IMG/VR virus record: IMGVR_UViG_3300044633_003049 | Location: 62,001-126,000 of that record | Length of the DNA stretch: 64,000 nt | Reading direction: 5' to 3' (one strand) | Shown: in pieces, positions 8,452 to 39,128 of the stretch | Layout of the letters: each line of letters begins with the position of its first letter | How positions within the stretch are numbered: position 1 is the stretch's first letter | Translations under genes and position numbers: made by a program | Notes under the pieces: generated by a model | Database searches by the model: none | Told to the model about the DNA's origin: nothing | The model's input: the letters and a program-made list of their open reading frames with translations, nothing else

Positions 8452-9063
8452 TTACTTATTAAATGATACAATTGAGTATCTTGGAAATTGTGCATACTCC
8501 TCAACTGAACTAACAAAGTGAGGTGATCTAAAAACTTTATTATTTAGTAATGTAACCCTATTGAATTTAGGTAGAACTTGTTTATTAAATTCAAAATCTT
8601 TATCATCAACAACGTTTAGTATTCCTCCCCAATCCCACATCCATTTTTCATTTACATAGTATATTAAATTAATGTGTCCACCATAATCATCAATGTGTGT
8701 TCTGAAGTAATCTCCTTTATCTGATTTGTGACATCTAATGTCAAATTCATTCAATTCAAATGGTGATACTTCCTTTAACATCGGTACAAAAAATTCATTG
8801 TACGTATTTTTAATATCTTCGTTTTGTTCTAATGTAACGGACCTACTATATCTTGTTGAGTATATTTCGTCTCCTTTAGGTAAGTAAGGTGATTCGGTTT
8901 TAAAAACGTGCTCAAAGTGATTTTCTCTTACTTGATGTTTAAGTTCCCATGTTTGTTCATTTACGAATAAATCATGTATTTTTTTTGCAACATCGGTCGG
9001 TAAAAAATTGTCAATTACTGTGTAACCAATTTCCAATAAATCGCTTTTGTTTTTAGTGTACAT
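8452..9063 (-). CDS. 2OG-Fe(II) oxygenase (prolyl-4-hydroxylase-like fold)
   Basis: IDNFLP, HxD (THIDD), WGGIL, PKFNR, distal His (PHFVS), 2OG-binding R (RYSIVSF). Confidence 0.85.
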   Translation of the reverse strand: MYTKNKSDLLEIGYTVIDNFLPTDVAKKIHDLFVNEQTWELKHQVRENHFEHVFKTESPYLPKGDEIYSTRYSRSVTLEQNEDIKNTYNEFFVPMLKEVSPFELNEFDIRCHKSDKGDYFRTHIDDYGGHINLIYYVNEKWMWDWGGILNVVDDKDFEFNKQVLPKFNRVTLLNNKVFRSPHFVSSVEEYAQFPRYSIVSFNK

Positions 9064-11787: not shown

Positions 11788-12699
11788 TTATTTTTGGGAT
11801 TTAAAAGACATAATATTGAAATAATTACGAATACCTTCTTCATAGTTAATGTGTTCAAAATCTACATATTTTTTTAATAAACTAAAATCAACTCCATAAT
11901 CTCTACTGTCATTTGTAAAATTTTCAAAGTATTCAAATGATTTTATTTTTTTTATAATATTAATCAGTTCTAATTTATTTATATTCAATTCATTGACTCC
12001 AATATTTAAAATTGGTTCGTTAAATTGTATGTTTACTAAAGTGGTTATAATTTTAACACAATCAATAACATGTAAATGTGGTCTTTTAGCTAAAGGGTCG
12101 TATATTTCAATTGGTTTTTTGTCAATTACATCATTTATTATATTATTAATAAAAACGTCATTTCTCCATATTTTAGTGGCAGATGTATTATAATCAAAAT
12201 TACCGTAAAGTGTTGATAATCTTAATATTTTAAAATTTGAATTTTTATTTTCGGTAATAATTTTCTCACACTCTATTTTCATTTTTGAATAGAGTGACGT
12301 TGGTATAACCTCTGAATTTTCATTTACAATGTCTTCCGTCTTACCGTAGACACTACAACTACTAATAAAATATACCTTGGGTGTTCTATATATCCCAGAC
12401 CAATTAAATGAGTTTATGAATGTATTAAAATAACTAACTTCAGTTTCAACTTGTTTTTCTGTATCTAATTCATTTAATCTAGGTTGTGATAAATAAAATA
12501 TCATATCAAAAGATGGGTAATGAAAATCAGATCTAAGTGTTATTCCACCTACGTCTCCGTGTATTTTTTTACATTCTATTAAATCTTGTGTATTATATTT
12601 GAACTTATCAAATACGACTACATTGTGCCCTTTTTTTGTTAGTTTCTTAGATAATGGTATACCTAAATAACCTCCTCCTCCTATTAGTAAAATATTCAT
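11788..12699 (-). CDS. NAD-dependent nucleotide-sugar epimerase/dehydratase (extended SDR)
   Basis: GGGGYLG, FISSCSVYG, YxxxK (YSKMK), LRLSTLYG, RPHLHV.D. Confidence 0.9.
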   Translation of the reverse strand: MNILLIGGGGYLGIPLSKKLTKKGHNVVVFDKFKYNTQDLIECKKIHGDVGGITLRSDFHYPSFDMIFYLSQPRLNELDTEKQVETEVSYFNTFINSFNWSGIYRTPKVYFISSCSVYGKTEDIVNENSEVIPTSLYSKMKIECEKIITENKNSNFKILRLSTLYGNFDYNTSATKIWRNDVFINNIINDVIDKKPIEIYDPLAKRPHLHVIDCVKIITTLVNIQFNEPILNIGVNELNINKLELINIIKKIKSFEYFENFTNDSRDYGVDFSLLKKYVDFEHINYEEGIRNYFNIMSFKSQK

Positions 12700-12700
12700 A

Positions 12701-13711
12701 TTATTCTCTTATCATATCGGCCGTGACACAATGAAAAGACCCTCCAAGCGTTCTTGAATGTCTTAATTTACAATCCAATGCCTCAATATTGTATTTTTTT
12801 AATTCTTTAATCAGTTCAGTTTGTCTATTGTCCACAATAACTGTATTTTCATCTATTGATAACAAATTAATACCAACCCATACTGAAGCTCGTTCAACTT
12901 TATGGTAACCGATGTCCACCATTGGTGGTGACCATATTTTATCCCAAGATTTTAACATCTCAGGCATATTATTTTCATTTACTCTTTCTGGATTTAACAA
13001 ACAAAGACCCTCACGGAGTAATGCGATGGTTGAATCCAAGTGGCTATATGAATACATGTTTTCAAGGATATGTACCTTGTATTGGTCTCCTAATAGGTTT
13101 TGTAACCATTTTCCACCTAACTTGTTACCAGTATTACTAACAAGATATAAAATATCTTTATTTGACCTCAAAATATTAGCAGCATCAAACACAGGTTCTC
13201 TCTCGGTTAATGTTAATTTAGATAAATCATCTCTTTGGTAACTGTCATCATTCAAGATTGGTTTTGGTGCGGATATCCACTTTGCCCCTTCGTTCATGTA
13301 TTCAATAAATTGATTTCTAAAACAATATGTTTCATATTGTCTTGACCTTAATGTCATAGGGGCTTCCAATATTGTATTTCCAATAACTGTAACAGTATCT
13401 CTTGGACAGAAAGTGTAATATTGGTCTGTTTTCCAAAAACCATTACTTATTACATTTTCAGTATTAATAACTTCGGGTCTTCTAACTTTAATATCAAGGT
13501 CTTTTAATACTTTTACTAAATTTTCTAAATCCTCATATGTTTCTTCATACACCTTATCGTCAAAATTACCTTGTTCTATATATGGGATTCTGTCTTTATC
13601 GGCATAATTAATTGCATGTAAATCTATACCATGTTTTGGCATATTAGCGTTGTCGATTGTACCTACAAACACCTCCTTTAATTTACCCCATTCATTATTA
13701 ACTGATATCAT
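12701..13711 (-). CDS. Amidinotransferase (glycine / inosamine-phosphate amidinotransferase family)
   Basis: NEWGKLKEVFVG, CPRD, catalytic Asp (FDAAN), His (HLDST) and Cys (GGSFHCVT). Confidence 0.9.
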   Translation of the reverse strand: MISVNNEWGKLKEVFVGTIDNANMPKHGIDLHAINYADKDRIPYIEQGNFDDKVYEETYEDLENLVKVLKDLDIKVRRPEVINTENVISNGFWKTDQYYTFCPRDTVTVIGNTILEAPMTLRSRQYETYCFRNQFIEYMNEGAKWISAPKPILNDDSYQRDDLSKLTLTEREPVFDAANILRSNKDILYLVSNTGNKLGGKWLQNLLGDQYKVHILENMYSYSHLDSTIALLREGLCLLNPERVNENNMPEMLKSWDKIWSPPMVDIGYHKVERASVWVGINLLSIDENTVIVDNRQTELIKELKKYNIEALDCKLRHSRTLGGSFHCVTADMIRE

Positions 13712-14300
13712 TTTTTCTAAAAATTTCTAATTTTGTCAAATCTGGCCAATCATTAATTGTCCATTCTTTTGGTTTATTTAATATTGCTGTTGGTAATTTA
13801 GTTAAACCTTCTTCCGCAATTTCAGGTGTCATATAATAATGATATCCAACCATATCTATATTTTGTTCTTTCCACGGTATATTTGGTAATCTACCGTCAT
13901 ATGACATTTTTTTTAATTTAATAGCAGCTTCTTGATTGTCGGTTAATATCATGCCACCTCTTCCCAATGATAAATGTTTTTGATATTGAAAACTAATTGA
14001 CATGAAAGTTTTAGGAATATAACTATTTGGTTTCCATAAAACTGCGGCATCGATAACACTATATGAAAGATAATAAAAATCTTTCCAATTTTGAGTTCTC
14101 CATTCTAATCCTAAATTTAATTTTTTAGCTAAAAACGGAATTGAGATGTAAGTTTGTTTAGGAACATTAATTGATTTTACATTATTATAACGTAAACATA
14201 ATTCAATTCCATGTGTACAACTATCGACCGCAACGGCAAACGGAGATCCGAAGAACTCCGCAATTTTTTTTTCAAATTCTATTACAGTGTTAAAATCCAT
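13698..14300 (-). CDS. DegT/DnrJ/EryC1/StrS sugar aminotransferase (shortened, 200 aa)
   Basis: FEKKIAEFFG, AVAVDSCT, VIDAA, SFQYQKHLSLGRGGMI (PLP Lys), GYHYYM. Confidence 0.85.
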   Translation of the reverse strand: MDFNTVIEFEKKIAEFFGSPFAVAVDSCTHGIELCLRYNNVKSINVPKQTYISIPFLAKKLNLGLEWRTQNWKDFYYLSYSVIDAAVLWKPNSYIPKTFMSISFQYQKHLSLGRGGMILTDNQEAAIKLKKMSYDGRLPNIPWKEQNIDMVGYHYYMTPEIAEEGLTKLPTAILNKPKEWTINDWPDLTKLEIFRKNDIS

Positions 14301-15390
14301 CTTTAAGATTATCAGGAATTAATTTTGATAAAGTTCTGTAATCTAAATTTTCATGCCCAAAATAATAACCGTCTGGTTGTAGCCAATTTGGATTGAGAAA
14401 TTTATCTTTTATTTTTGTTTCCCAGTCATCATTTACAGAGACTGCCGGTTGATTTCTATAATACTCTGCAAATTCGCTCCATGTTGATTGGTCTGATTTA
14501 ATTAAAAATTTACAATAACTTAATGAAAATAAATCAACGATATTTTCAATAACATTTCCTCTAATTAAATCATTAATATTCATTTCCGAATTTAATAAAT
14601 ACTCTTTTATTATTGGGACAATATCGAATCTGGTTATAATAGAGTCACCATATTTATCTTTATAATATGAGAAAAATTCATATGGTAAATCTGTACTTAA
14701 ATAAAATTTTTGGTCTGGATTAATTTTAAGAATATTATCAATAATATTGAAGTATTTTTCATCTTCGACAAAGTCATAATATTTATTTACCTTTGGTTTT
14801 ATATTTTTCATTTTTGAAAAATCTTTTCTTATTTCAACAGGTAAATTAAAAATATCTTCCTCGGAACAATTCACTCCACTATTTCTTCTAATATGAATAC
14901 CTACAACATCATAAGTATTTCTTCTAAGTAAATCTTCAATAAATTGATCTTTCAACCTAACATATTTCAACGGCCTTTCCTTTAATGTTCTTTTATATAA
15001 TGAATGAATATGTTGATAACCAAAATCACAGTACCAATGGTCATCATCTGACAATGATTTCCCATCATCATATATTAACCTTAACTTATCTTTATCTATT
15101 TTTGACGATAATCTTACATTAAAATTTTCAACATCTAAAACCGTTAAAAAATTTAAATCTTTAACCCTTTTATCATACTCATATGAAATAAATGTTGAGG
15201 TTTCTGGTAAACTTATTAAGGTGAGTTCAGGCCAATCAGTTTTATCTAACATAATTCTGAATTCACAATCATTACGTCTATTTATATCATAGGCCACTTC
15301 CCAATGAAATATTCTATTACATAAACCAGTATCATTATTTTCCCAACCACCGTATGGTTCTGACCATCTTAATGTTCTTTTGTATATCAT
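14290..15390 (-). CDS. Fucosyltransferase-like GT-B protein (GT11/GT23/NodZ-like)
   Basis: GLCNRI, VGIHIRR, FYLSTD, DLFSLSYC..LI...STWS. Confidence 0.7.
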   Translation of the reverse strand: MIYKRTLRWSEPYGGWENNDTGLCNRIFHWEVAYDINRRNDCEFRIMLDKTDWPELTLISLPETSTFISYEYDKRVKDLNFLTVLDVENFNVRLSSKIDKDKLRLIYDDGKSLSDDDHWYCDFGYQHIHSLYKRTLKERPLKYVRLKDQFIEDLLRRNTYDVVGIHIRRNSGVNCSEEDIFNLPVEIRKDFSKMKNIKPKVNKYYDFVEDEKYFNIIDNILKINPDQKFYLSTDLPYEFFSYYKDKYGDSIITRFDIVPIIKEYLLNSEMNINDLIRGNVIENIVDLFSLSYCKFLIKSDQSTWSEFAEYYRNQPAVSVNDDWETKIKDKFLNPNWLQPDGYYFGHENLDYRTLSKLIPDNLKDGF

Positions 15391-15393
15391 ATT

Positions 15394-16158
15394 TTAAAAT
15401 TTATCTTTTAATAAATCAAACCATTTATTAGCTAAAATTTCACTATCCTCATTTGATACGTGAAATGGATTTTTGGTTTCTTTATTCTCATTATAATATG
15501 TCCATGGATTTAGTTCATCTAAATTTTTAATAACATTATCTTTACAAAAATAAAAATATTTATCATCTAATATAGGTGTTATTAAATGAAAATCAATATT
15601 ATTTGATAATAATTTATACGCACCTTCTGAAATTATCCACGTATCTTGTTGTTTTTTCCATTCCATGTCGTAAAGAAATTGAAAATAATTATTTACAATT
15701 TTTTTCATCTCTTCGTTTACAATATTCTCATATAATATATTATTAATTGAGTTACTTAACATGGTTGGGGTACTGTTGTTAAATATTATATTTTTACCGC
15801 TCTCTTCTAAACTATTTTTATATGAAATATTCGATAATCCGTTATTAGATTTAAAATAATGATTTTTCCATTTTTCAAAGTAATTATTTACTTTTAAATC
15901 ATTTAAGGGTATTTCAATTCTATCAGGACTAGTTGTACCAATAATAATATGATGGGGGTTATGTTTTATAACTTCATCAATCTGTAATCTTATACATTGA
16001 TTACTGACACCTCCCTTCGCGTATGTCATAATTTCACAACCTAACATTTCTTTAAGAATATCTGTAAAATGTTTTCCATGTCCATTTTCTAAATTATTAT
16101 CGTCTTTAGAAATTGACGCCATAAAACTATCACCACAAATACCCAATATTTTTTTCAT
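15394..16158 (-). CDS. SGNH/GDSL-fold protein
   Basis: GICGDSF, AKGGVSN, TSPDR, C-terminal FH. Confidence 0.6.
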   Translation of the reverse strand: MKKILGICGDSFMASISKDDNNLENGHGKHFTDILKEMLGCEIMTYAKGGVSNQCIRLQIDEVIKHNPHHIIIGTTSPDRIEIPLNDLKVNNYFEKWKNHYFKSNNGLSNISYKNSLEESGKNIIFNNSTPTMLSNSINNILYENIVNEEMKKIVNNYFQFLYDMEWKKQQDTWIISEGAYKLLSNNIDFHLITPILDDKYFYFCKDNVIKNLDELNPWTYYNENKETKNPFHVSNEDSEILANKWFDLLKDKF

Positions 16159-16164
16159 TATAGG

Positions 16165-17613
16165 CTACTTATTATAATTTTCTTTATCCGAAATATAAAC
16201 ACCAGGTTCAAAATGTGTTATTCTACCGTCAGTAACTTTAACATCACCAATTGTATTGTCAACCACCAATGAATTATACCAATCTTCCAACTCAGGAAAT
16301 GTTGCGACAAAATTCTTATTTCTACGAATATCATATTGAACATAAAAACTCTTAAAATCGTGATATTGCATTGACATGTCCATTTCACTTGTGTTATGAC
16401 CTCTATTAACAACTTCAATGTAATCAATTAATCTTTGAATTTGAGCCCCTTCATTCATATTAATTAATGGATTTTTTTTATGTTTTCTCCACCACATTGA
16501 TAACTTACCATGTAAATCATGTTTGACGTCATCTGGTAATGTAAGTGGTGACATAAATGCTGGCCATCTTAATATGTTAAAATCTACAATTGGTTTATGT
16601 GTTCCGTATTTTTCTTTTAATTTCAACATATCATCTAAAAATTCGGTAATACTAAATAAACACAAACTATTAATTGTCATCATAATAACAACTTGTCTAA
16701 TTTTAGCACTCTCAATTACTTTAACTAAATTACTTCTCCATAGTTCATAATTTAAACCATCTCTAATATATTCTGCTTGTGCACCATAAGCCTCACAACT
16801 TGTGTATAAATCAAACTCTTTGATGTCTAATTCGTGAGATATACTAATTAACCTATTCACAGTCATTTCATTAAGACCTAGGTTAGAATTGACTGCAAGT
16901 CGTAAATTAGGGGATGGGTATTGTTTCATTGTATCCATAAACTGCCAGAAATTACGAGATTGTGATGGTTCCCCACCAGTTACACGTATTTCCATTAATT
17001 TTTGTGATAACTCAGGCCACCATTTTAAAAAGGCATCCACATATGGATTATTCTCATTGTACTTACCATAAATCTCTGACCAAGATCCGTCAGCATAATA
17101 TGCCCCCGCACTTGTTGTTTTGAATTTCTGATATGGACCGTTATCTTTTATGTCTTTACCCCATGTTGTTGAGTATCCCGAATTACAATATGAACAAGCA
17201 AAATTACAAGTTCTATCAAATGATACCTCAATAGTTTGTGGTACAATGTCCGCATCCCAAGGTAGTTCTTTTAATGCCGCAATATCTTCTGAACTATATA
17301 TTTGACTCTTATATACTCTATCTGAAATATTATTTCTACCGATATCCTCAATTTTCCAACAATAAGAACATTCAGCCGGTTTAACACCCTCTAACATCAT
17401 TTTACGAATTTCTTTTTTGAAATCAGTATTATGTAATGCCGCAGGGTTGGTTTTAATTGCTTCAACATCTATTGGATGTGGTAATGGTAGGTGACATGAA
17501 TTTGTAAACCCATGACCTAAATGTAAACTAACATTTAACCATTTTGCCGCACAAAAACTACAACTTATCTTATTTAAATGTTCATCTCTCCAATTTGACA
17601 ATTCTTCTGACAT
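16165..17613 (-). CDS. Radical SAM enzyme with N-terminal twitch-like Cys cluster
   Basis: CAAKW..SCH...CSYCW auxiliary cluster; CNFACSYC; TGGEP. Confidence 0.9.
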   Translation of the reverse strand: MSEELSNWRDEHLNKISCSFCAAKWLNVSLHLGHGFTNSCHLPLPHPIDVEAIKTNPAALHNTDFKKEIRKMMLEGVKPAECSYCWKIEDIGRNNISDRVYKSQIYSSEDIAALKELPWDADIVPQTIEVSFDRTCNFACSYCNSGYSTTWGKDIKDNGPYQKFKTTSAGAYYADGSWSEIYGKYNENNPYVDAFLKWWPELSQKLMEIRVTGGEPSQSRNFWQFMDTMKQYPSPNLRLAVNSNLGLNEMTVNRLISISHELDIKEFDLYTSCEAYGAQAEYIRDGLNYELWRSNLVKVIESAKIRQVVIMMTINSLCLFSITEFLDDMLKLKEKYGTHKPIVDFNILRWPAFMSPLTLPDDVKHDLHGKLSMWWRKHKKNPLINMNEGAQIQRLIDYIEVVNRGHNTSEMDMSMQYHDFKSFYVQYDIRRNKNFVATFPELEDWYNSLVVDNTIGDVKVTDGRITHFEPGVYISDKENYNK

Positions 17614-17661
17614 GTTTTCTATTTTTTATAATATAATATTTTTTATTGATAATCTGAAACG

Positions 17662-18399
17662 TTATTTAATATATTCCTTAGGTACTCTTTCTAAAAAATT
17701 TGTATTTTTAGACTCATCATAAATTATACCTAAATTATTGATATTGTTAAAATTATGAAGAAAAAGAATGTCGTTATAAAATTCTTCCTCTAATATAACA
17801 TCAGTTTCACTTTGATAAATTAATTTAGAAAAATTAATATCACTATGGTTAACTATAGTTGAAAAATGATTAACATCCACTTGACAATAATATCTAGCAT
17901 TTTCAAAATCGCATTCAGGGCTGGAACATCCTAAAAATAAACCTGGATTTTTATAATCATCAATTAAGTTACCCTCAAAACTAATTCTATTATTTTCTTC
18001 AAAATTTTTATAAACTATAATTTCATTTTCTTTTTTTATGACAGTTATAATTACCCCTTTATGGATGTCCTCTTTTTTTATGTCTTTAAATGGAATAAAA
18101 TTAAAAGATTCCTCTATTTCGGTTTTATTCCAAAACTCAAATGCCATAGTATTTGTAGTTTTATTATATGATAACCCAATATTTTTACCAGGTTTACCAT
18201 ATATCATACAAATTTCATCGGTAATAAATTCTTCTGTTATTTTAAAATCACATGTAATAATGTAATTATCATTTAATAAGAATTCATCTAATATTTTATT
18301 ATTTGTTTTGTTATATTCGGTTACATATTGATTATCATGATGGGTTGACATATCCCATTGAAACTTAACCCAATAAGGTTGTTTATAATTTATTATCAT
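17662..18399 (-). CDS. Stand-alone LamG/concanavalin-like domain protein
   Basis: Beta-rich; GKPGKNIGLSY..FEFW and LFLGC..P motifs shared with the two N-terminal repeats of 18383-21184. Confidence 0.55.
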   Translation of the reverse strand: MIINYKQPYWVKFQWDMSTHHDNQYVTEYNKTNNKILDEFLLNDNYIITCDFKITEEFITDEICMIYGKPGKNIGLSYNKTTNTMAFEFWNKTEIEESFNFIPFKDIKKEDIHKGVIITVIKKENEIIVYKNFEENNRISFEGNLIDDYKNPGLFLGCSSPECDFENARYYCQVDVNHFSTIVNHSDINFSKLIYQSETDVILEEEFYNDILFLHNFNNINNLGIIYDESKNTNFLERVPKEYIK

Positions 18400-21184
18400 T
18401 TCTTATTTGCTTTATAAAATTAATTAATTCGGGATAATACTCCTCACAATTTACTCCTCTTCTTTTTTCATATTCATCAATGAATTTAATAAAATCTCTT
18501 TTACTACTATCAAATTCTTTAATGTCAGTATCGTAATCTGTAATGAAGATGTCTTTTATTCTTGAAATTTTTTCAATCTCTTGGGTTGAAAATCCGACGT
18601 CTTCAATAGTTTGTTGTTCATAGAAATTAATACTTCTATATGTTGAATTAAATTTCATGTACTTTAACCACCTATTAAAGTACTCAACATCAATATAATC
18701 TTTCAATACTCTAAAACTCATAAATGAAGGATGTCTCAAATATGATGTATCTAAAATAACTGCCGAGTTCCAATATCTTGATGTATTGAAATGTTTAAGT
18801 TTAAAACTATGTATTTTTTTAATTAGTTTTTCGTATGAAAATATACTAAACATATTAAAAGTTGACATTACTACAATGGTTACTTTGTCCAATACCGTTA
18901 AAATTTTATCTATGTTTGAGAATAGTCTATCAAACTCCAATCCAAATCTTGTGTATTCGGCTTGTTTACCGTATCCTTCACATGATGTAAACAATATTAC
19001 CTCCTTAACTCTACCTTCAGCAATTATTTTTTCTAATTTTAAAATTAATTTATCAATCAACTCATCTGATACACCTAAATTGCTATTGATTGATAATTTT
19101 AAATTTTCGTTAGGTGTGTCAGTTTCCAATATGAAATCTAATACTTTCCATGTGTCTTTTGATAATAGAGGTTCTCCACCGGTAATTCTAAAAGTATCTA
19201 AAGTTGAATATAATTCAGGGAACCATTCCCAAAACGCTTCCACATATGGATTTTCATCTGTTTGTTTATATGGTTTAGTATTTCTTTCCTCCATCCTTCT
19301 GAGACCATTAAATTCATGTGTATCTAACATATATCCTCCGTGTTCGTTAATCTCTTCCATCCATTTGGTCGAATATTCAGGTCCACAATACGCACATTTA
19401 AAATTACATGTGTTAGAAAAATTAACTTCAACATATTTTGGGTTGTAGTTATCTCTCCAATGTAAGTTGGCAATTTCGTCAAAGTGAGGTTCAGACCATG
19501 GTTCCGCAGATTTAAAAAATCTATCAGAAAATGAATCGGAATGATCTTCTACATTCCAACAATAATTACATTCACTTGGTCTTTTGTTTTCCAACATTTC
19601 TTTCCTAGCTCTCTTCTTTACATTACTATTGTGTAATGCGGTTGGGTTTCTTTTAATTTCATCTAACCCTATTTTATGTGGTTCAGGATGGTGACAACTA
19701 TGTGTTGTTCCATTATGTAAATGCATAGTCACTTGTGTCCATTTAGCCAAACAAAAACCACAACCAACTTTATTTAATTTTTCTTTAACAAGATTAAAAT
19801 CTACCATTGTCTTAAATGTTAATAAATCAACAAGTTCGATTGATGTTTCTTTATTTAAATTGTCAAAAATTTCATCAATATTATCAGTTTTTTTAAAATT
19901 AAAATAAGTTAAAGAATTATCTGTTTTTGTTAGTTTTTCTAAATCAACAATATTCATAATTCCATCATAAATACTAAAATGATTTAATTCCATTTCAGTA
20001 AAACATTTATGATTTTCTAATAAAGAACTTGGATTATGGCAACCGAAATAAATTGATTCCGTATTGTATTCAGATATTAAATTATCTTTAACTTCAATTG
20101 TGTCAATTAATTTAAAATTATGATACAATTCGAAATATTCATTCTTTTTATAAATTAAACTAATAGTAATTCCATTATGTAAATCGTTACGATTTATTTT
20201 ATAGTTTTTGTGGCAATGAAATTCTTTATTTTCTTCATCTTTTTGTGTCCAATATTCAAAAACAAACTTCTCGACTTCATAATCAAAGCTAATACCAAAG
20301 TTTTTACCTGGTATTCCAAAAAATCCAATTTTCTCATCTTGAGTAAAATGACGTTCTATTTTAAAAATAATATTTAATGAAAAATCTCTATTTGTTAATA
20401 AATTAGATTCTAAATTGGTTTTTAATTTAAATGGTTTTTTATGTTCAATTTTTAATCCAGGTACCCTTTTTCTTTTTAATTTTATTCTATCCGCAACACT
20501 GACATTTAATTCACTAAATGAAATGTTTATTAGTTTATCTTTTTGATTTTGTATTAGAAAATAATTATAGTCTTCTTTATGAACTAAATATTTTTCCTTT
20601 AAATCAAAGTAACATAACAAATTATCATTAAGATTTTTACTATTATAAAATTTTTCAACATCTTCTATATTCGCCTCTCCATTAAAAATACTAAAATGTT
20701 TTAAATCTAATTCTGTAAAACATTTGTGTTTGTGATTATCAGCATCGGGGTTATGACAACCAAAATAAAGTGGTTGGGTATAGTAATCTTCAATTAAAGG
20801 GTCGTCTAATTCTACATCGAAAAATATATTAAAGTCATGATATAATTCTAATATATTTTTTTCTTTATCGTAATGTATAGTTAAAACAAGACCATTTTCA
20901 ACATCAATTCTATTAATATGGAAATCTTTATGGCAGTGAAAATTATCTCTACCGTTCAACCCTTTTGTCCAAAATTCAAATACAAAAGTCTCAACTTCAA
21001 AATCATAACTAATTCCAAAGTTTTTACCTGGCATACCTAAAAATCCTAATTTTTCATTATCGTAAAAATTTTCAACTTTAAATTCAATTGTTAAATAGGA
21101 ACTATCAGATAAAAACGGATTTATCTTATTACTATCAAGATTATTAATTTCAAATAACCAAGGTTTTTGATTTTCTACTTTCAT
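18383..21184 (-). CDS. Two LamG-like domains fused to a twitch-type radical SAM enzyme
   Basis: Duplicated G.PGKNFGIS.D.EVE.FVFE.WT / YFGCHNP repeats; CLAKW..SCH, CNYCW, CNFKCAYC, TGGEP; paralog of 16165-17613. Confidence 0.85.
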   Translation of the reverse strand: MKVENQKPWLFEINNLDSNKINPFLSDSSYLTIEFKVENFYDNEKLGFLGMPGKNFGISYDFEVETFVFEFWTKGLNGRDNFHCHKDFHINRIDVENGLVLTIHYDKEKNILELYHDFNIFFDVELDDPLIEDYYTQPLYFGCHNPDADNHKHKCFTELDLKHFSIFNGEANIEDVEKFYNSKNLNDNLLCYFDLKEKYLVHKEDYNYFLIQNQKDKLINISFSELNVSVADRIKLKRKRVPGLKIEHKKPFKLKTNLESNLLTNRDFSLNIIFKIERHFTQDEKIGFFGIPGKNFGISFDYEVEKFVFEYWTQKDEENKEFHCHKNYKINRNDLHNGITISLIYKKNEYFELYHNFKLIDTIEVKDNLISEYNTESIYFGCHNPSSLLENHKCFTEMELNHFSIYDGIMNIVDLEKLTKTDNSLTYFNFKKTDNIDEIFDNLNKETSIELVDLLTFKTMVDFNLVKEKLNKVGCGFCLAKWTQVTMHLHNGTTHSCHHPEPHKIGLDEIKRNPTALHNSNVKKRARKEMLENKRPSECNYCWNVEDHSDSFSDRFFKSAEPWSEPHFDEIANLHWRDNYNPKYVEVNFSNTCNFKCAYCGPEYSTKWMEEINEHGGYMLDTHEFNGLRRMEERNTKPYKQTDENPYVEAFWEWFPELYSTLDTFRITGGEPLLSKDTWKVLDFILETDTPNENLKLSINSNLGVSDELIDKLILKLEKIIAEGRVKEVILFTSCEGYGKQAEYTRFGLEFDRLFSNIDKILTVLDKVTIVVMSTFNMFSIFSYEKLIKKIHSFKLKHFNTSRYWNSAVILDTSYLRHPSFMSFRVLKDYIDVEYFNRWLKYMKFNSTYRSINFYEQQTIEDVGFSTQEIEKISRIKDIFITDYDTDIKEFDSSKRDFIKFIDEYEKRRGVNCEEYYPELINFIKQIRNDNKL

Positions 21185-22599
21185 TTCATTGTAACATTTA
21201 TAAATTTAGTATTTTCATATAAAGATACATCAATATTTTCAACATTCAAAACATTTAATATATTGTTTAATCCATCTTCATTATGTTTAATTAAACCCTG
21301 TTGCATCTCCATAACAAATCTTTTTTCGTTTCTAGCGGTAGTTTCCCCCTTAGCCCATTTTCCTTTAACATAACCCTCATCTATATGGGGTATACAGTCA
21401 AAATTACCTTCCTTTCTGAATGGAATCACATTTTCAACCACATTAATATTTTCTTTTGAAATGTTAACATTAAATTCACATTCTTCTTTATTAATATTTT
21501 CTACAACTCCCTTTTTAAAATCCATTTGTAATAACAATCCATCTGAATCATGTAACGCTTCATTGATATCATTTATTGATTTATTAAAAATTCTAATTTC
21601 CGCAATTTTACCTTTAAAAAATGTATTAACGTGTGAACAAAATCCAATTATAAATGGTTGTAGATTATTATATGGTTTTAATTTTTTCTCAATTTTAAAT
21701 GGTGTGTTTTGTTTAGTTCCGTTTTGATTATTAATTAATTCATCGTTTATATATAATGACATCTCCTTTCTTTTACTATTATATGACATTGTCACCCATG
21801 TCCATTGATTTTCATATCTTTTTGCATAGTTGTAATAGTGATTACTATCTTTATCATACATAACCATATTAACTGAACGTGAATTATTAAACGATAATCC
21901 CCAAGTCCAAGAATCTAATTTTCTTATTAATGGGTACTCAATGAATTTCTTTTCTTCGTCCCCAACAAGCCAAATCGGTACCTTTTCTGGTTGTTGTTCA
22001 GCATTAAATAATATTGATATTGTATGGTCATTATCCAAACAACTATCTAATTCTTTATTAGACGGTATAATTATAAAGTTATTTATTCCATTAAAAGTTG
22101 CCGTTGTTTTATTTTTATAAGTTTTAAAAACATTATTCGTTGTATATCCTTCTAAATAACATCTCCAAAATAAGTCATCATCTTCCTGACCCCAATCCCA
22201 ATATTCATTTGAATATCCATTGGTTTTATATGCTTGTTCTTTTGTGAATAAAACGACACCTCCAAAGTATTGATCATAACCTAACCCGTAATTATATTTT
22301 GATAACTTTGTTGCAATGTGTGTTGGATGTTCTTCAGGATACGAATAATCAGCATCTACTTGTGGTAACATATCAACATCGTGCCATGCAACATAGTCAC
22401 ATCCGTCTTCAAACGCGTAATGTGCTGCAATATTTTTCATTGCACCTCTATTGAATAACTTTTCGTCTACTTGGTGACCAACATAAAACGTATGGTCAAT
22501 TCCATTATCTGTTAAATGTTTTGATAGATGTGGTATTAATTTATCAATGTGTTCTTTTCTATCTCTATATGGTATACAAATACCTAATTTATGACTCAT
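21181..22599 (-). CDS. GT7 beta-1,4-galactosyltransferase-like enzyme with inserted LamG domain
   Basis: IPYRDR, FNRGAMKN, WHDVD, YFGGV, GYSNEYWDWGQEDDD; LamG (WTWVTMSY, LYIND, FKGKIAEIRIFN); GT7 C-terminus DGLNN...INVTM. Confidence 0.85.
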   Translation of the reverse strand: MSHKLGICIPYRDRKEHIDKLIPHLSKHLTDNGIDHTFYVGHQVDEKLFNRGAMKNIAAHYAFEDGCDYVAWHDVDMLPQVDADYSYPEEHPTHIATKLSKYNYGLGYDQYFGGVVLFTKEQAYKTNGYSNEYWDWGQEDDDLFWRCYLEGYTTNNVFKTYKNKTTATFNGINNFIIIPSNKELDSCLDNDHTISILFNAEQQPEKVPIWLVGDEEKKFIEYPLIRKLDSWTWGLSFNNSRSVNMVMYDKDSNHYYNYAKRYENQWTWVTMSYNSKRKEMSLYINDELINNQNGTKQNTPFKIEKKLKPYNNLQPFIIGFCSHVNTFFKGKIAEIRIFNKSINDINEALHDSDGLLLQMDFKKGVVENINKEECEFNVNISKENINVVENVIPFRKEGNFDCIPHIDEGYVKGKWAKGETTARNEKRFVMEMQQGLIKHNEDGLNNILNVLNVENIDVSLYENTKFINVTMK

Positions 22600-24047
22600 A
22601 TTGCTACGTTAACGTGTGTTATGTTTTCACTTATCTGAATTTTTGAATGTTCAGCAAATTCCAATGTTGATAATCCGTCATTTTCCAATAACTCGTCATT
22701 TAATCTAACTTCATTATAAAATCTTAATTGATTCCATCTGGTTGCTTTGAATTTCCATTTGTTTTTATAAAACCCATTTTCTTTGTGTGGTAATAATGCA
22801 AATGTCGATTCTCTTCTATGTGGTATTTTTATTCTTTTATATTTTTCAAATTCTAAATCAACAATTTCACAATTAAAAATTTTACCGTTATTTAAATTAT
22901 CCGATAAATCTTTTAATTTATAACCTTCAGTAAAATTAGGGTCATAATATAGTTGTAGGTCTTGTGATGATATATAATCACCAAAATTTTCCTTTAAATT
23001 ATTATTTTCATTTTTAGATATTTCTAAAATTTCATTGTCATTTAAATTACAATTGTATACTGCGAATGTTGAAATATAACCATTAAAATAATTAGGATAT
23101 TGAGAATTAGGTGTGTCATTTCTTTTTGGGTTACCTACACCTAAATAAAAATATTTTTCATTATCGTATGAACGTATTTTTTTATAAAATACTTCTTTCC
23201 CAATCAGTTTTCCGTCTTGATATACTTTAATAACGTCGTTAATGTTGTCTAACACAACACATATATTCGTTTTATAATTTGTTATTATATTTGAATTAAC
23301 ATAAACCGCATTATTGTCTTTATCAAAAGTGCAGAAATTATATCTACGAAATGAATTATACGTAATTGAAAAATCGTATCCTGGAATTGAAAATATAGTA
23401 AAATCGTCAGAGTCTTTTGTATGGTCTAATATTAAATCAGTAGGATAAAACGAAACGAAAAATGTCATATTTTGATTAAGTTTAAATTCATTTCTTGCCT
23501 TAACATATGCATTTATACCATTAAGTTTTAATACTTTTGATGGTGATGTCCCCACATTCTGAATATCTAAATCATTTAATGGTATACCTTTTTTTTCACA
23601 TCTATAAAGTAAGTCAGTGTCCTCATAACCCCAACCCCAATACTTATTGGAATACCCATCTATTTGACGAAAATGTTCCATTGGGAACATTACAACTCCT
23701 CCAAAATATTCTTCGAAGGTTAATTTTTTATCATACTCTTCATTATTTAAAAAATGTGTTGATAAATGTAACGGGACCTCTGAATATGAATAATCAACAT
23801 GTATTGGCATCATGTCAATATCATGAAATACGACATAATCACAATTTAATTCTTCAGCATACTTAAATCCGATATTTAATAATGTTCCCCTATTAAATAA
23901 TTTAGCATCGTCTTGGTTAATAACAATTAATTCATAATTGATATCAAATTTTTCCATATATCTAACAAATCGTCTACTAAATTCTTTTAAATGACTTCTT
24001 CTATTTCTATATGGAACAACGACTCCTAATTTTTTACTTTTTTCCAC
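22596..24047 (-). CDS. GT7 beta-1,4-galactosyltransferase-like enzyme with inserted LamG domain
   Basis: VPYRNR, FNRGTLLNIG, FHDID, YFGGV, GYSNKYWGWGYED; LamG (VYQDG, FNGYISTFAVYN, DLSDNLNNG); C-terminus DGLSTL...HVNVAI. Confidence 0.85.
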   Translation of the reverse strand: MEKSKKLGVVVPYRNRRSHLKEFSRRFVRYMEKFDINYELIVINQDDAKLFNRGTLLNIGFKYAEELNCDYVVFHDIDMMPIHVDYSYSEVPLHLSTHFLNNEEYDKKLTFEEYFGGVVMFPMEHFRQIDGYSNKYWGWGYEDTDLLYRCEKKGIPLNDLDIQNVGTSPSKVLKLNGINAYVKARNEFKLNQNMTFFVSFYPTDLILDHTKDSDDFTIFSIPGYDFSITYNSFRRYNFCTFDKDNNAVYVNSNIITNYKTNICVVLDNINDVIKVYQDGKLIGKEVFYKKIRSYDNEKYFYLGVGNPKRNDTPNSQYPNYFNGYISTFAVYNCNLNDNEILEISKNENNNLKENFGDYISSQDLQLYYDPNFTEGYKLKDLSDNLNNGKIFNCEIVDLEFEKYKRIKIPHRRESTFALLPHKENGFYKNKWKFKATRWNQLRFYNEVRLNDELLENDGLSTLEFAEHSKIQISENITHVNVAI

Positions 24048-24264
24048 TCTTAGTTGTTACTTTACTGTCCTCAACGAAACCTTCTTTTACAAATTTGTTA
24101 TGAAATTCCGCTAGATAATATTGGGCTCTGTTACCCCACTCATCTTTATCGATTTCTTCAAACCAAACGGTTAAAGAATCTAATGAATTTGCAATTTTTT
24201 CTAAGGCTTTTACTTTTCTTGTTTCGAGAGCCATTAACTCGTCATTTGATGGTTTTACACTCAT
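24034..24264 (-). CDS. Hypothetical protein (76 aa)
   Basis: Overlapping, translationally coupled ORF within the operon. Confidence 0.6.
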   Translation of the reverse strand: MSVKPSNDELMALETRKVKALEKIANSLDSLTVWFEEIDKDEWGNRAQYYLAEFHNKFVKEGFVEDSKVTTKSGKK

Positions 24265-25118
24265 ATTGATGTTATTTTATTTATTAATTTATTCCAACTT
24301 TTATATCTGTTATATTCGGGATATATTAATCCCAATTCAAACATATATTCTCTTTTATTTAGATTTATTTTATATTTTGTTTTTAACAATTCAGTGAACA
24401 TTTTAAAATACTCATCTGAATAAGAATAATCTTCTTTTAATTCTGCAACCGCTTTCACTCTATCTATGGAAGTTTTATCCCATTTAAAATGATGTACTTG
24501 AACTGAATAGGATGGTATTGGTGCAATTGATGGATGACCCCAACCTTGCCATTTCCATGTGGTGTGTCCATCAATATTTGCATAGTGTTGACCTGAAGTA
24601 ATTTGTATTCCACCTCTAATTAAACATATTTTATTTGGACACGCTTTACTCATATGATATCTAAAAAAACCGGCATTTGGAAATTGTTCCCATATTGATA
24701 CATCATCTTTTAATTCAACAAACTCACCATCTTCTCCAATTCTATCAATAAAACCACCTCGAACAATATCCCATCCAAATTCTTCACAATCGTTAATTAA
24801 TGAAACAATATCATCATCAGGATATAAATGAAATTCATCAATGTCGGCAATCACCCACCAATCAAATGGTATTTGATCCTTAATGAAGTTATATAATGCG
24901 GTTACTTTCTCCCAATCAAAAACTCTATCTTCAATGACCTTAACAATCTTCACATTGTCATGGTCTTTAATAATTTCATTTATATCTTCTTCTAATGTTG
25001 GGTATAAATCTGTTTTATAAATTGCAATGTTAATCTCATCAACATATCTTTTATAATGTTTGATGAAATGTGGAAGTAAATTAACTCCGTGACCTATAAC
25101 TGTTAATAACCTAACCAT
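24261..25118 (-). CDS. GT2-like/GT92-like glycosyltransferase (GT-A fold)
   Basis: LLPHFIKHY, WWVIADIDEF (DxD), HHFKW. Confidence 0.75.
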   Translation of the reverse strand: MVRLLTVIGHGVNLLPHFIKHYKRYVDEINIAIYKTDLYPTLEEDINEIIKDHDNVKIVKVIEDRVFDWEKVTALYNFIKDQIPFDWWVIADIDEFHLYPDDDIVSLINDCEEFGWDIVRGGFIDRIGEDGEFVELKDDVSIWEQFPNAGFFRYHMSKACPNKICLIRGGIQITSGQHYANIDGHTTWKWQGWGHPSIAPIPSYSVQVHHFKWDKTSIDRVKAVAELKEDYSYSDEYFKMFTELLKTKYKINLNKREYMFELGLIYPEYNRYKSWNKLINKITSI

Positions 25119-25843
25119 TATTTTTTATTAATTACCGTTATACCGCTTGATGCTGGTTTGTTAGGTAATATACGAAAATTAAATAAATTAATCAAATTAT
25201 AAAGTGGATTTTTTTCTAATTCTTTAATAAATTTTGATGGACCGTCAAATCTATGGTGGTCTTTTTTTGCGTCCTCTGAAACTATTAATGATTCCTCGTA
25301 ATCTGAATCTGTATCGTGAATAACAATAATACCTTTATCGGTTAATAGTGTTGAATATAATTCAAAATCTTTCTTAACTCCTTCATATGAATGGTCACCA
25401 TCTATAAAGATAAAATCTAATTTAATATCTTGTAAAACAAAGAAATTATAATATGCATCTTCTGATGTTGATTTAATCAATCTGGGTTGAAACGTATGTC
25501 GGTAGTATGAATACTCATCCTCAAGGTCGTTAGGTCCTCCTACCCCATTACAAGCGTCAACCAGATAGGTTACACCAATATCACCCCAATTTAAAGTGTC
25601 GTTACCTTCAAATATTCCTTGTTTATGTAAATCTAATCTTGCTTGTGTTATAATACGAGGTATATATCCACCACCAGAACCGATACATGCGCAGTTCTTG
25701 GCTCTCATATGTTGTATTAACGAATAAACTATAATACCATCACCTAAATGTTCTTCGGTGGCACCATGTGTCCATCTATAAGGTACAGGTTCACCATAAT
25801 TGGTTGTAATTTTTTCTTTAATAAAATCTTGATTGGTAATCAT
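25118..25843 (-). CDS. Class I SAM-dependent methyltransferase (Methyltransf_24-like)
   Basis: IGSGGG, DFIFIDGDHSYEGVKKDF, GIIVIHDT. Confidence 0.85.
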   Translation of the reverse strand: MITNQDFIKEKITTNYGEPVPYRWTHGATEEHLGDGIIVYSLIQHMRAKNCACIGSGGGYIPRIITQARLDLHKQGIFEGNDTLNWGDIGVTYLVDACNGVGGPNDLEDEYSYYRHTFQPRLIKSTSEDAYYNFFVLQDIKLDFIFIDGDHSYEGVKKDFELYSTLLTDKGIIVIHDTDSDYEESLIVSEDAKKDHHRFDGPSKFIKELEKNPLYNLINLFNFRILPNKPASSGITVINKK

Positions 25844-39093: not shown

Positions 39094-39099
39094 ATAAAC

Positions 39100-39107: not shown

Positions 39108-39128
39108 TATTATATTGTCTTTATGGAT

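What the first reader, a model, noticed from the sequence alone, without database searches (positions are those of the whole stretch)
16165..21184. Radical SAM enzyme with two LamG-like domains, plus a split paralog pair
Seen: 18383-21184 is repeat-repeat-rSAM. The next two genes are a free copy of the same repeat (17662-18399) and a free paralogous rSAM (16165-17613), the same order unfused. The repeat has conserved G.PGKN.G.S, FE.W and GC..P...C motifs. With the GT7s, five LamG-like domains occur in four consecutive genes. Inference: radical chemistry targeted to an assembled glycan, possibly within a multi-enzyme complex.
Basis: partly seen in the sequence, partly recalled or inferred. Interest (0 to 1): 0.62.

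Follow-up and report, generated by a model that had tools for sequence, protein, structure and literature searches.

The report
Lectin-tagged radical SAM enzymes in phage
A large lake-water phage carries a conserved sugar-chain assembly gene set in which an uncharacterised type of radical SAM enzyme is fused to one or two lectin-like domains, which suggests that these enzymes do radical chemistry on a finished sugar chain rather than on a small precursor.

Summary
18383-21184(-) encodes repeat-repeat-radical SAM (rSAM-A); the repeats are 46% identical (E 6e-57). 17662-18399(-) is a free copy of the repeat and 16165-17613(-) is a paralogous rSAM (rSAM-B, 36%, E 3e-92).

The repeat has no Pfam hit but folds (pLDDT 92) as a concanavalin/LamG jelly roll (Z 17.9). 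Its nearest predicted shapes are the LamG domains of phage GT7 enzymes.

Both rSAMs belong to NCBIfam NF033640, an uncharacterised and mostly viral family with an N-terminal, 4-Cys twitch domain.

The window comes from a roughly 330-kb freshwater phage. In 45 related loci the block is: small ORF, GT7, GT7, rSAM-A, repeat. rSAM-A carries 0, 1 or 2 fused repeats.

The "split pair" reading fails:
- The free repeat overlaps the stop codon of rSAM-A in 42 of 42 loci.
- It persists where rSAM-B is absent.
- rSAM-B is an old paralog that also occurs in phages without the repeat.

Glycan targeting is supported but not shown. The neighbours are all sugar enzymes. Bacterial family members sit in an O-antigen locus and are independently fused to Wzt_C, Tectonin lectin, glycosyltransferase and methyltransferase domains. 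The reaction and the acceptor remain unknown.

The parts
25118..25843 (-). SAM-dependent methyltransferase (Pfam Methyltransf_24), first gene of the conserved block
   Evidence: Pfam E 7e-12. Present at 52-89% identity in the 39 related loci whose sequence reaches that far upstream.
24261..25118 (-). GT2-like protein (weak assignment)
   Evidence: Pfam Glyco_tranf_2_4, E 1e-3, below the cut-off. Conserved at 43-68% in related loci.
24034..24264 (-). Conserved small ORF (76 aa): variable charged N-terminus, a 45-aa helical core, and a variable K/E/D/T/P-rich tail
   Evidence: Found directly upstream of GT7b in every related locus, including the most distant one, L070. No Pfam family.
22596..24047 (-). 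GT7b: beta-1,4-galactosyltransferase-like glycosyltransferase with a Laminin_G_3 domain
   Evidence: Pfam Glyco_transf_7N 7e-19, 7C 9e-20, Laminin_G_3 8e-9. DID motif read from the translation.
21181..22599 (-). GT7a: second GT7 glycosyltransferase with a Laminin_G_3 domain
   Evidence: Pfam. Matches beta4GalT7 and beta4GalT1 at E 1e-30 over aa 3-174. DVD motif.
20540..21184 (-). rSAM-A, distal LamG-like repeat (aa 1-215)
   Evidence: Orthologous to the distal repeats of L018 and L022 at 58-69% identity.
19835..20479 (-). rSAM-A, proximal LamG-like repeat (aa 236-450)
   Evidence: Orthologous to other proximal repeats at 65-70% identity.
18383..19807 (-). rSAM-A catalytic part (aa 460-933). 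N-terminal twitch domain: Cys478, Cys497, Cys539, Cys542. Radical SAM core: Cys593-x3-Cys597-x2-Cys600, plus GGEP.
   Evidence: NF033640, 306 bits against a cut-off of 170. Pfam Radical_SAM 32.2 bits. Cysteine positions derived from the alignments.
17662..18399 (-). Free LamG-like protein (245 aa). Its start overlaps the rSAM-A stop by 17 nt.
   Evidence: AF2 model pLDDT 92.1. Jelly-roll matches at Z 17.9. Overlap conserved in 42/42 loci.
16165..17613 (-). rSAM-B (482 aa), an old paralog. Twitch Cys21, Cys40, Cys82, Cys85; core Cys136, Cys140, Cys143; GGEP 213-216.
   Evidence: NF033640, 298.5 bits. Invariant columns. Model pLDDT 90.7. The most conserved gene of the block, 65-97% identity.
11788..16158 (-). 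Variable sugar-precursor cassette: two unknowns, a DegT-type aminotransferase fragment, an unknown, and an NAD epimerase/dehydratase
   Evidence: Pfam and NCBIfam. Present in only some related loci, between rSAM-B and the next conserved gene.
10471..11760 (-). Conserved 429-aa protein that follows rSAM-B in most loci; possibly a GT10-like glycosyltransferase (a lead only)
   Evidence: Conserved at 25-58% identity. Atlas feature score 0.80 to Glyco_transf_10 clusters. No Pfam or NCBIfam hit.

Best explanation
The region is the core of a phage-encoded glycan assembly and tailoring module. It lies in a large (about 330 kb) freshwater tailed phage with T4-type tail-fibre modules.

The invariant unit is: small helical protein, GT7-LamG, GT7-LamG, rSAM-A, free LamG-like protein. 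It is usually flanked by a methyltransferase and a GT2-like gene on one side, and by rSAM-B and a further conserved protein on the other.

rSAM-A and rSAM-B are members of the uncharacterised family NF033640. In this family a 4-Cys twitch-type auxiliary Fe-S domain sits before the radical SAM barrel, not after it.

Proposed mechanism (inferred):
- The two GT7 enzymes (with the GT2-like protein and perhaps the conserved protein after rSAM-B) build an oligosaccharide in the cytoplasm of the infected cell.
- The LamG-like modules act as substrate-targeting, lectin-like domains. They are carried by the GT7 enzymes, fused to rSAM-A in 0-2 copies, and supplied as a translationally coupled free protein. 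They hold the nascent glycan, or its carrier, at the enzymes.
- rSAM-A, and separately rSAM-B, cleave SAM to a 5'-deoxyadenosyl radical and abstract a hydrogen from a sugar carbon of the assembled chain.
- The fully Cys-ligated auxiliary cluster then takes up the electron. The likeliest outcomes are therefore oxidation to a keto-sugar or epimerisation.

The acceptor is probably cytoplasmic, for example a virion fibre protein or the small conserved protein, rather than a lipid-linked surface polymer.

Shown: gene order, domain folds, family membership, conservation and the independent fusions. Inferred: glycan binding by the LamG modules, the type of radical reaction, and the acceptor.
For: - Family and motifs: NF033640 scores of 306 and 298 bits against a cut-off of 170. 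Cys21/40/82/85, Cys136/140/143 and GGEP are invariant in 34 diverse members. The BtrN twitch region aligns to the N-terminal part of the profile, E 6e-4. Pfam SPASM hits fall at the N-terminus of bacterial members.
- Fold of the repeat: Z 17.9 to the PAPP-A LamG-like domain, 17.4 to a putative carbohydrate-binding protein, 13-14 to CBM40. The nearest Atlas shapes are phage GT7 LamG_3 domains.
- Conserved block in 45 viral loci, with 0, 1 or 2 fused repeats. The repeat family is found almost only free or fused to this rSAM: 79 representatives among 1.84 billion.
- Translational coupling of rSAM-A and the free repeat in 42/42 loci.
- Sugar context everywhere. In the window: GT7 twice, a methyltransferase, DegT and an epimerase. 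In distant loci: sulfotransferase, UDP-glucose dehydrogenase, carbamoyltransferase, DUF6071, and epimerase/dehydratase.
- Bacterial members sit in an O-antigen ABC-transporter locus (RmlC, RmlD, Wzm, WbsX, TylF). One of them is fused behind ABC_tran + Wzt_C.
- Other members carry Tectonin, EryCIII-like glycosyltransferase or methyltransferase domains directly before the twitch.
- Wzt's carbohydrate-binding domain reads the modified chain end (PMC9445017). Tectonins bind O-alkylated sugars (PMC5238581).
- No Wzx/Wzy-like polytopic membrane protein was found in the 211 kb held.
- The block lies directly downstream of collagen-like tail-fibre genes, on the same strand.
Against: - No biochemical datum exists for any member of NF033640, and no paper on it was found.
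- The nearest solved folds include peptide maturases (SkfB, SuiB) as well as sugar and nucleotide enzymes. None stands out.
- Both rSAM clades also occur in phages that lack GT7 and the repeat (RsoM2USA and L006-L014), so the LamG link is lineage-specific.
- A concanavalin-like fold does not prove sugar binding; PAPP-A and pentraxins also bind proteins.
- Sequence similarity between the repeat and the GT7 LamG domains is not significant (hhalign E 0.0025, probability 12%).
- The Wzt_C fusion is known from one cluster only.
- The record is 63% complete, so missing membrane genes prove little.
Confidence: 0.5

Rival explanations
1. The rSAMs act on soluble nucleotide-sugar or sugar precursors, as BtrN, DesII or BlsE do, and not on the assembled chain. 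The LamG-like domains are protein-protein adaptors that dock the rSAMs onto the LamG-bearing GT7 enzymes, so that a modified donor sugar is channelled to them.
For: - BlsE (Z 13.4), MoaA (12.2), viperin (11.7) and DesII (11.4) are among the nearest folds. Profile hits to viperin and MoaA.
- DegT aminotransferase and SDR epimerase/dehydratase genes lie nearby in the window and in distant phages. The rSAM dehydrogenase plus DegT-type aminotransferase pair is known from butirosin biosynthesis (established knowledge).
- rSAM-A and rSAM-B occur without any LamG in RsoM2USA-like phages.
- The repeat is closest in shape to the GT7 LamG domains, which would suit homotypic docking.
Against: - The precursor cassette (DegT, epimerase) is variable and is absent from many loci that keep both rSAMs.
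- Independent fusions to Wzt_C and Tectonin, which bind polymer ends or modified sugars, point to a polymeric substrate.
- A copy number of 0-2 is typical of binding modules for polyvalent ligands.
Confidence: 0.2
2. The rSAMs modify a peptide or protein. The LamG-like domain plays the part that a leader-recognition (RRE) domain plays in RiPP maturases. The substrate is the conserved small protein at 24034-24264 (conserved core plus variable tail) or a virion fibre protein, which the GT7 enzymes also glycosylate.
For: - The best single fold and profile matches are peptide maturases: SkfB Z 13.6 and Foldseek E 4.5e-7; TigE E 1e-5.
- A small ORF with a leader/core-like layout lies directly upstream of GT7b in every locus. 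One tail form, KPKDPTIDG, recurs in distant lineages.
- The closest solved relative of GT7a is beta4GalT7, which acts on a peptide-linked sugar (established knowledge).
- The module is adjacent to collagen-like tail-fibre genes.
- LamG-type domains can bind proteins (PAPP-A).
Against: - No RRE domain was found.
- The tails lack cysteine and are not consistently conserved.
- Bacterial family members lie in an O-antigen locus without an evident precursor peptide.
- The maturase matches are no better than those to sugar or nucleotide rSAMs.
Confidence: 0.15
3. The module remodels a host cell-surface polysaccharide (O-antigen or capsule) during infection, for superinfection exclusion or receptor masking. 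It would use the host's lipid carrier and export machinery.
For: Bacterial homologs lie in an O-antigen ABC-transporter locus. Phage-encoded O-antigen modification is well known (established knowledge).
Against: - No priming transferase, flippase, polymerase or ABC-2 permease candidate was seen: no protein has more than 4 predicted transmembrane segments in the 211 kb held.
- All enzymes of the block look soluble.
- The block is co-oriented with late structural genes.
Confidence: 0.1

Closest known systems
NCBIfam NF033640 (N_Twi_rSAM, 'twitch domain-containing radical SAM protein')
   Same: Both rSAMs score 298-306 bits against a cut-off of 170, over the whole model. They have the four N-terminal cysteines, the Cx3Cx2C motif and GGEP.
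   Different: The family is a named model without a known reaction. The window's clades A and B score lower than the distant paralogs found in arrays, which reach up to 419 bits. N-terminal LamG-like repeats are not part of the model.
BtrN (butirosin 2-deoxy-scyllo-inosamine dehydrogenase) and other twitch/SPASM dehydrogenases such as anSME
   Same: A radical SAM barrel plus a small auxiliary-cluster domain bearing four cysteines. BtrN residues 165-259 align to the N-terminal part of the family profile (E 6e-4). anSME Z 11.7. BtrN has a sugar-type substrate.
   Different: Here the auxiliary domain lies before the barrel, whereas in BtrN and anSME it lies after it. Overall similarity is only at superfamily level. 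There is no evidence of the same reaction.
Bacterial fusions of the same rSAM family: ABC_tran-Wzt_C-twitch-rSAM (P0323, locus L080) and Tectonin-twitch-rSAM (P0362, P0366)
   Same: A carbohydrate-recognition domain is placed directly N-terminal of the twitch domain, in a polysaccharide gene cluster.
   Different: The binding domains have different folds (Wzt_C sandwich, Tectonin propeller) and the proteins are bacterial. These fusions arose independently of the phage LamG fusion.
Laminin_G_3 / concanavalin A-like lectin superfamily, as in the neighbouring phage GT7-LamG enzymes
   Same: The same jelly-roll fold: Z 12-18 to solved members and TM 0.72-0.75 to GT7 LamG_3 models.
   Different: No Pfam hit for the repeat. 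No significant sequence link. It has its own conserved motifs, GKPGKN and FEFW.
Virus-encoded glycosylation machineries (Mimivirus fibril glycans, chlorovirus capsid glycans, mycobacteriophage virion glycosylation); comparison drawn from established knowledge, not tested here
   Same: Soluble, virus-encoded glycosyltransferases together with sugar-precursor enzymes (aminotransferase, epimerase, methyltransferase), lying next to structural genes.
   Different: To my knowledge none of those systems includes radical SAM enzymes or LamG-tagged enzymes. Virion glycosylation has not been shown for this phage.

Membership tests
Radical SAM superfamily (PF04055) | Cx3Cx2C cluster motif and the GGE SAM-binding motif | tested here: met
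   C136/C140/C143 and G213-G214-E215-P216 of P0003 are invariant in 34 sequences, including the rSAM-A part. In P0001 the cysteines are C593/C597/C600.
Radical SAM superfamily (PF04055) | Pfam score above the gathering threshold | tested here: inconclusive
   P0001 scores 32.2 bits against 29.5 (met). P0003 scores 18.6 bits against 29.5 (not met). The fold is nevertheless a radical SAM barrel: Z 11-13.6 to many rSAM structures.
NF033640 N_Twi_rSAM | Full-length HMM score above the curated cut-off of 170 bits | tested here: met
   306.1 bits (P0001, model positions 4-397) and 298.5 bits (P0003, positions 2-398).
NF033640 N_Twi_rSAM | Twitch-type cysteine domain N-terminal to the barrel | tested here: met
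   C21, C40, C82 and C85 are invariant. The BtrN twitch aligns to profile positions 34-88, E 6e-4. Pfam SPASM hits fall at the N-terminus in bacterial members.
NF033640 N_Twi_rSAM | Binding of a second [4Fe-4S] cluster | not testable with these tools
   Needs iron/sulfide analysis and EPR or Mossbauer spectroscopy of the purified protein.
Concanavalin A-like lectin / LamG superfamily | Jelly-roll beta-sandwich fold | tested here: met
   Model pLDDT 92.1 and pTM 0.90. Z 17.9 (191 aa, rmsd 2.9) to the PAPP-A LamG-like domain, 17.4 to 4dqa, 15.2 to pentraxin, 13.3 to laminin LG5. Foldseek E 2e-7.
Concanavalin A-like lectin / LamG superfamily | Match to a Pfam LamG model (Laminin_G_1/2/3) | tested here: not met
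   No Pfam hit for P0002 or for aa 1-460 of P0001. hhalign against the GT7b LamG gives E 0.0025, probability 12%. Other comparisons show nothing.
Concanavalin A-like lectin / LamG superfamily | Carbohydrate or calcium binding | not testable with these tools
   Needs glycan arrays, ITC or a structure with ligand.
RiPP radical SAM maturases (SkfB, SuiB, CteB type) | C-terminal SPASM/twitch domain, an RRE leader-binding domain, and an adjacent precursor peptide | tested here: not met
   The auxiliary domain is N-terminal. No RRE hit in Pfam or NCBIfam. A conserved small ORF does exist upstream of GT7b, but whether it is a substrate is unknown.
GT7 beta-1,4-galactosyltransferase family (the neighbouring genes) | Glyco_transf_7N and 7C domains with the DxD metal-binding motif | tested here: met
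   Pfam E 1e-15 to 1e-20. beta4GalT7 E 1e-30. DVD and DID motifs in the translations.

The most novel reading that the evidence does not exclude
The invariant five-gene unit (small protein, GT7-LamG, GT7-LamG, rSAM-A, free LamG) makes a new class of phage-encoded glycoconjugate on a protein carrier. The small protein's conserved helical core would serve as a handle recognised by the LamG modules. Its variable tail, or a fibre protein, would be glycosylated by the GT7 enzymes, and the glycan or the linkage would then be altered by radical chemistry. More generally, NF033640 would be a widespread, unrecognised family of lectin-guided radical SAM enzymes that edit finished polysaccharides in phages and in bacterial O-antigen pathways.
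Probability: 0.15. Interest if true: 0.85.

Novelty: new variant of a known kind. Interest (0 to 1): 0.62.

Why it matters
Radical SAM enzymes known to act on sugars nearly all work on small soluble intermediates. Enzymes that edit an assembled glycan are very rare.

The family here has thousands of members. More than 7,000 sequence clusters matched rSAM-B alone, and the nearest clusters are 91-100% viral. It is recurrently joined to carbohydrate-recognition domains: LamG-like in phages, and Wzt_C and Tectonin in bacteria. It has no known reaction.

The phage block gives a compact, soluble and conserved set of five to eight genes that can be expressed together to find the reaction. The result would also bear on what large aquatic phages do with their many glycosyltransferases, and on unassigned steps in O-antigen chain-end modification.

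Tried and rejected
- Complex prediction of rSAM-B with the free repeat gave no verdict (ipSAE 0.00 in both runs, controls not run). This is no evidence either way.
- An apparent rSAM-B fusion with the following gene in L042 (918 aa) was an error in my ORF script. There is a stop codon between the two genes.
- Sequence searches of rSAM-B and of the repeat profile against PDB sequences gave nothing useful on their own.
- Paper searches for this family, for N-terminal twitch domains, for jumbo-phage radical SAM enzymes and for radical SAM with Wzt found nothing relevant.
- I looked by sequence for the C-terminal part of the GT7 fold after the LamG domain, to show that LamG is an insertion in the GT7 domain. 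Nothing was found, so this remains an impression from reading the sequence.
- No pairwise similarity was found between the window's methyltransferase and the TylF-type enzyme of the bacterial locus, so I do not claim a shared methyltransferase partner.
- The 298-aa protein that flanks rSAM-A in distant phages is related neither to the repeat nor to GT7.
- T4 late-promoter octamers and sigma-70 or terminator scans were not above chance.
- The NCLDV capsid family was absent.
- No RNA run holds the stretch, so expression was not examined and read laying was not used.

Full report
**Source and setting**

The window is bases 62001-126000 of a 211,784-base IMG/VR virus record that CheckV rates 63% complete. 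That implies a genome of roughly 330 kb.

GC content is about 27-38% and fairly even along the record. Almost all genes between 7.7 and 50 kb lie on the minus strand with minimal spacing.

- Upstream in the direction of transcription lie very large collagen-repeat proteins with a Peptidase_S74 chaperone domain and tail-fibre PHROGs.
- Elsewhere in the record there is a protein matching T4 long-tail-fibre distal subunits and a second cluster of glycosyltransferases.
- NCLDV capsid is absent.
- A short Gp23 (T4 capsid) match exists.

The 5-kb stretch is held nearly word for word in lake-water and freshwater metagenomes of 15 studies, and in no RNA run. This is therefore a recurrent freshwater tailed phage of jumbo size with T4-type tail-fibre modules.

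**Check of the observation**

The three ORFs are as described.

- The two N-terminal repeats of the 933-aa protein are 46% identical (E 6e-57).
- The free 245-aa protein matches both repeats (E 8e-23 and 9e-20).
- The two radical SAM parts are 36% identical over 475 residues (E 3e-92).
- Both upstream genes are GT7-type glycosyltransferases with a Pfam Laminin_G_3 domain. GT7a matches beta4GalT7 and beta4GalT1 at E 1e-30.

**What the repeat is**

The repeat has no Pfam or NCBIfam hit. With an alignment of 32 homologs it folds with pLDDT 92.1 and pTM 0.90. The model is a concanavalin/LamG/pentraxin jelly roll. Matches:

| Match | Z |
|---|---|
| LamG-like domain of PAPP-A (191 residues, rmsd 2.9) | 17.9 |
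| Putative carbohydrate-binding protein of Bacteroides | 17.4 |
| Pentraxins | about 15 |
| Sialic-acid-binding CBM40 modules | 13-14 |
| Laminin G domains | 12-13 |

Among predicted structures, the nearest shapes after its own family and the 931-aa rSAM fusion are the LamG_3 domains of phage GT7-LamG proteins (TM 0.72-0.75 over 204-212 residues). At sequence level that link is not significant.

The repeat family is tiny. A profile search of 1.84 billion representatives found 79 proteins. These are free proteins of about 245 aa, fragments, or fusions to this rSAM.

**What the radical SAM enzymes are**

Both score about 300 bits against NCBIfam NF033640, 'twitch domain-containing radical SAM protein', whose cut-off is 170.

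In an alignment of 34 diverse members, the invariant residues are four N-terminal cysteines (C21, C40, C82, C85 of rSAM-B), the Cx3Cx2C motif (C136, C140, C143) and GGEP.

The twitch region of BtrN aligns to the N-terminal part of the profile (E 6e-4). Pfam's SPASM model hits the N-terminus of bacterial members. The auxiliary-cluster domain therefore lies before the barrel, the reverse of BtrN, anSME and the peptide maturases.

The rSAM-B model (pLDDT 90.7) resembles many radical SAM structures about equally:

| Structure | Z |
|---|---|
| SkfB | 13.6 |
| BlsE | 13.4 |
| MoaA | 12.2 |
| GDGT-MAS | 11.9 |
| SuiB | 11.9 |
| viperin | 11.7 |
| anSME | 11.7 |
| DesII | 11.4 |

It does not fall in with any characterised enzyme.

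The nearest clusters in the ESM Atlas are 91-100% viral. More than 7,000 sequence clusters matched rSAM-B. I found no paper on the family.

**Related loci**

A search of viral contigs with the repeat profile gave 45 loci. They share the following block:

1. methyltransferase
2. GT2-like protein
3. a small ORF
4. GT7b
5. GT7a
6. rSAM-A
7. free repeat
8. usually rSAM-B
9. a conserved 429-aa protein

rSAM-A carries two repeats in a few loci (the window's own, L018/L021, L022, L059), one in most, and none in several (L037, L040, L042-46, L053-58).

Distal repeats are orthologous to each other (58-69% identity), and so are proximal repeats (65-70%). All fused repeats are only 22-35% identical to the free protein. 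This indicates one capture and one duplication.

The fused repeats diverge faster than the catalytic part. rSAM-B is the best conserved gene of the block (65-97%).

A quick tree shows that rSAM-A and rSAM-B are old orthologous clades. Each includes a copy from Ralstonia phage RsoM2USA (gp349 and gp202). Repeat-free forms are basal (the tree is a quick search with a midpoint root, so it is indicative only).

**Why the 'split pair' reading fails**

- The start of the free repeat overlaps the stop of rSAM-A by 4-17 nt in 42 of 42 loci. The gap to the following gene has a median of +34 nt.
- The most distant repeat homologs still follow GT7, GT7 and a 468-470-aa rSAM-A, but have no rSAM-B after them (also L054-56).
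- RsoM2USA and several phage-like contigs filed as MAGs have both rSAM clades but neither the repeat nor GT7.

The free repeat therefore belongs with rSAM-A, and rSAM-B is an independent, older member of the module.

**Evidence on the substrate**

Every annotatable neighbour is a carbohydrate enzyme.

- In the window: two GT7 enzymes, a methyltransferase, a DegT-type aminotransferase fragment and an NAD epimerase/dehydratase.
- In distant loci: sulfotransferase, UDP-glucose dehydrogenase, carbamoyltransferase, DUF6071/GDSL-like proteins and epimerase/dehydratase.

The family is rare in bacteria: 3 of 401 Pseudomonadota genomes, one of which is probably a misbinned phage contig. One clear bacterial case is informative. 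It lies on a chromosome contig with DnaE and AccA, and its locus holds RmlC, RmlD, Wzm, a Wzt fused to a family member (ABC_tran, Wzt_C, SPASM, Radical_SAM; 854 aa), three more paralogs, a TylF-type O-methyltransferase, a class I methyltransferase and a WbsX glycosyltransferase.

A search with the rSAM part of that fusion found further N-terminal partners placed directly before the twitch domain:

- Tectonin lectin domains
- DUF5648
- an EryCIII-like glycosyltransferase domain
- class I or FkbM methyltransferases

The carbohydrate-binding domain of Wzt recognises the modified terminus of the O-antigen chain (PMC9445017). Tectonins bind O-alkylated sugars (PMC5238581).

Three unrelated carbohydrate-recognition folds have thus been joined to the same position of this rSAM family. 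This is the strongest argument that the LamG-like repeats are glycan-targeting modules and that the substrate is a glycan, probably a polymer or its end.

**Acceptor**

No protein in the 211 kb has more than four predicted membrane segments. All enzymes of the block look soluble, and the block follows the fibre genes on the same strand. This favours a cytoplasmic acceptor such as a virion protein. The record is incomplete, however, and host machinery could be used.

**The small ORF**

The ORF at 24034-24264 was not in the finding. It is present in all loci, with a 45-aa core that is better conserved than GT7b and a variable charged tail. It has no Pfam family. It could be a scaffold, or the carrier or acceptor of the glycan. 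This is untested.

**Reaction**

This is inference only. A fully cysteine-ligated auxiliary cluster next to the active site is the arrangement used by BtrN and anSME to remove the second electron (established knowledge). Oxidation of a sugar carbinol to a ketone, or epimerisation, are therefore the likeliest outcomes. Arrays of five to eight paralogs in some contigs suggest several positions or residues are handled by separate enzymes.

**Verdict**

- The fold inference is confirmed.
- The glycan inference is supported indirectly.
- The 'unfused copy' idea is rejected.
- The complex idea is untested.

The enzymes are members of a named but uncharacterised family. The LamG-tagged architecture and the conserved phage block are new variants.

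Noticed in passing
window 24034-24264 (-): A conserved 76-aa ORF lies between the GT2-like gene and GT7b, overlapping both. It has a 45-aa helical core (LE.RKVKALEKIAN.LDALT.WFEEIDK.EW..R.QYYLAEFH) and a variable K/E/D/T/P-rich tail. It is present in every related locus. The tail form KPKDPTIDG recurs in distant lineages.
   Followed up: partly
G000:C1:45020-45985 (-), outside the window (L062/L065): A third, distant radical SAM ORF (353 aa) in the same phage. It scores 46 bits against NF033640, below the cut-off, and has a Pfam Radical_SAM hit.
   Followed up: partly
L007, L008, L010, L013, L014; G004:C41:68210-80077: Tandem arrays of five to eight NF033640 paralogs (20-24% identical to rSAM-B, up to 419 bits to the model). 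They lie on contigs filed under Bdellovibrionota, Rickettsiales, Verrucomicrobia and Betaproteobacteria MAGs. Their gene content looks phage-like, so they are probably misbinned.
   Followed up: partly
window 13698-14300 (-) and 12701-13711 (-): The DegT-type aminotransferase hit covers only a 200-aa ORF (profile positions about 54-245). The next ORF (336 aa) is highly conserved in related loci (72-82%) but has no family hit. The aminotransferase may be split or truncated.
   Followed up: no
window 26569-28230 (-) and 28950-29813 (-): Two further Laminin_G_3 proteins lie between the fibre genes and the glycan block. This makes seven concanavalin-like domains within about 13.6 kb.
   Followed up: no
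window 31469-35305 (-) and 37399-49916 (-): A run of very large collagen-repeat tail-fibre proteins, one with a Peptidase_S74 chaperone domain. A P4H-like 2OG-Fe(II) oxygenase lies at 8452-9063, which raises the question of whether the fibres are hydroxylated or glycosylated.
   Followed up: no
window 35366, 37381, 39100, 43582, 51687, 52588, 61015, 63673 (+ strand): The octamer TATAAATA (TATTTATA on the coding strand) sits in eight of the short gaps between minus-strand genes, a few bases before the start codons. The total count in the window is not above chance.
   Followed up: no
G000:C1:21013-35463 (+), outside the window: A second block, on the opposite strand, holds several glycosyltransferase-like genes. 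The only Gp23 (T4 capsid) Pfam hit in the record is a 100-aa ORF at 23899-24081 inside this block, so it is probably not the capsid gene.
   Followed up: partly
proteins P0334, P0350, P0373, P0379, P0381 and others: Many bacterial family members are 560-650 aa long, with an insertion of about 150 aa in the barrel. JGI names them 'glutamate-1-semialdehyde 2,1-aminomutase', which looks like a mis-annotation.
   Followed up: no
P0004 aa 345-472 and P0005 aa 345-483: About 120-140 residues follow the LamG_3 domain of both GT7 enzymes. By eye they resemble the C-terminal segment of beta4GalT (H...DGLN), which would make LamG an insertion in the catalytic domain. A sequence search did not confirm this.
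   Followed up: partly
whole record G000: IMG/VR classes the record as a provirus. However, gene content and GC look phage-like over all 211 kb, and no flanking bacterial genes were noticed.
   Followed up: no
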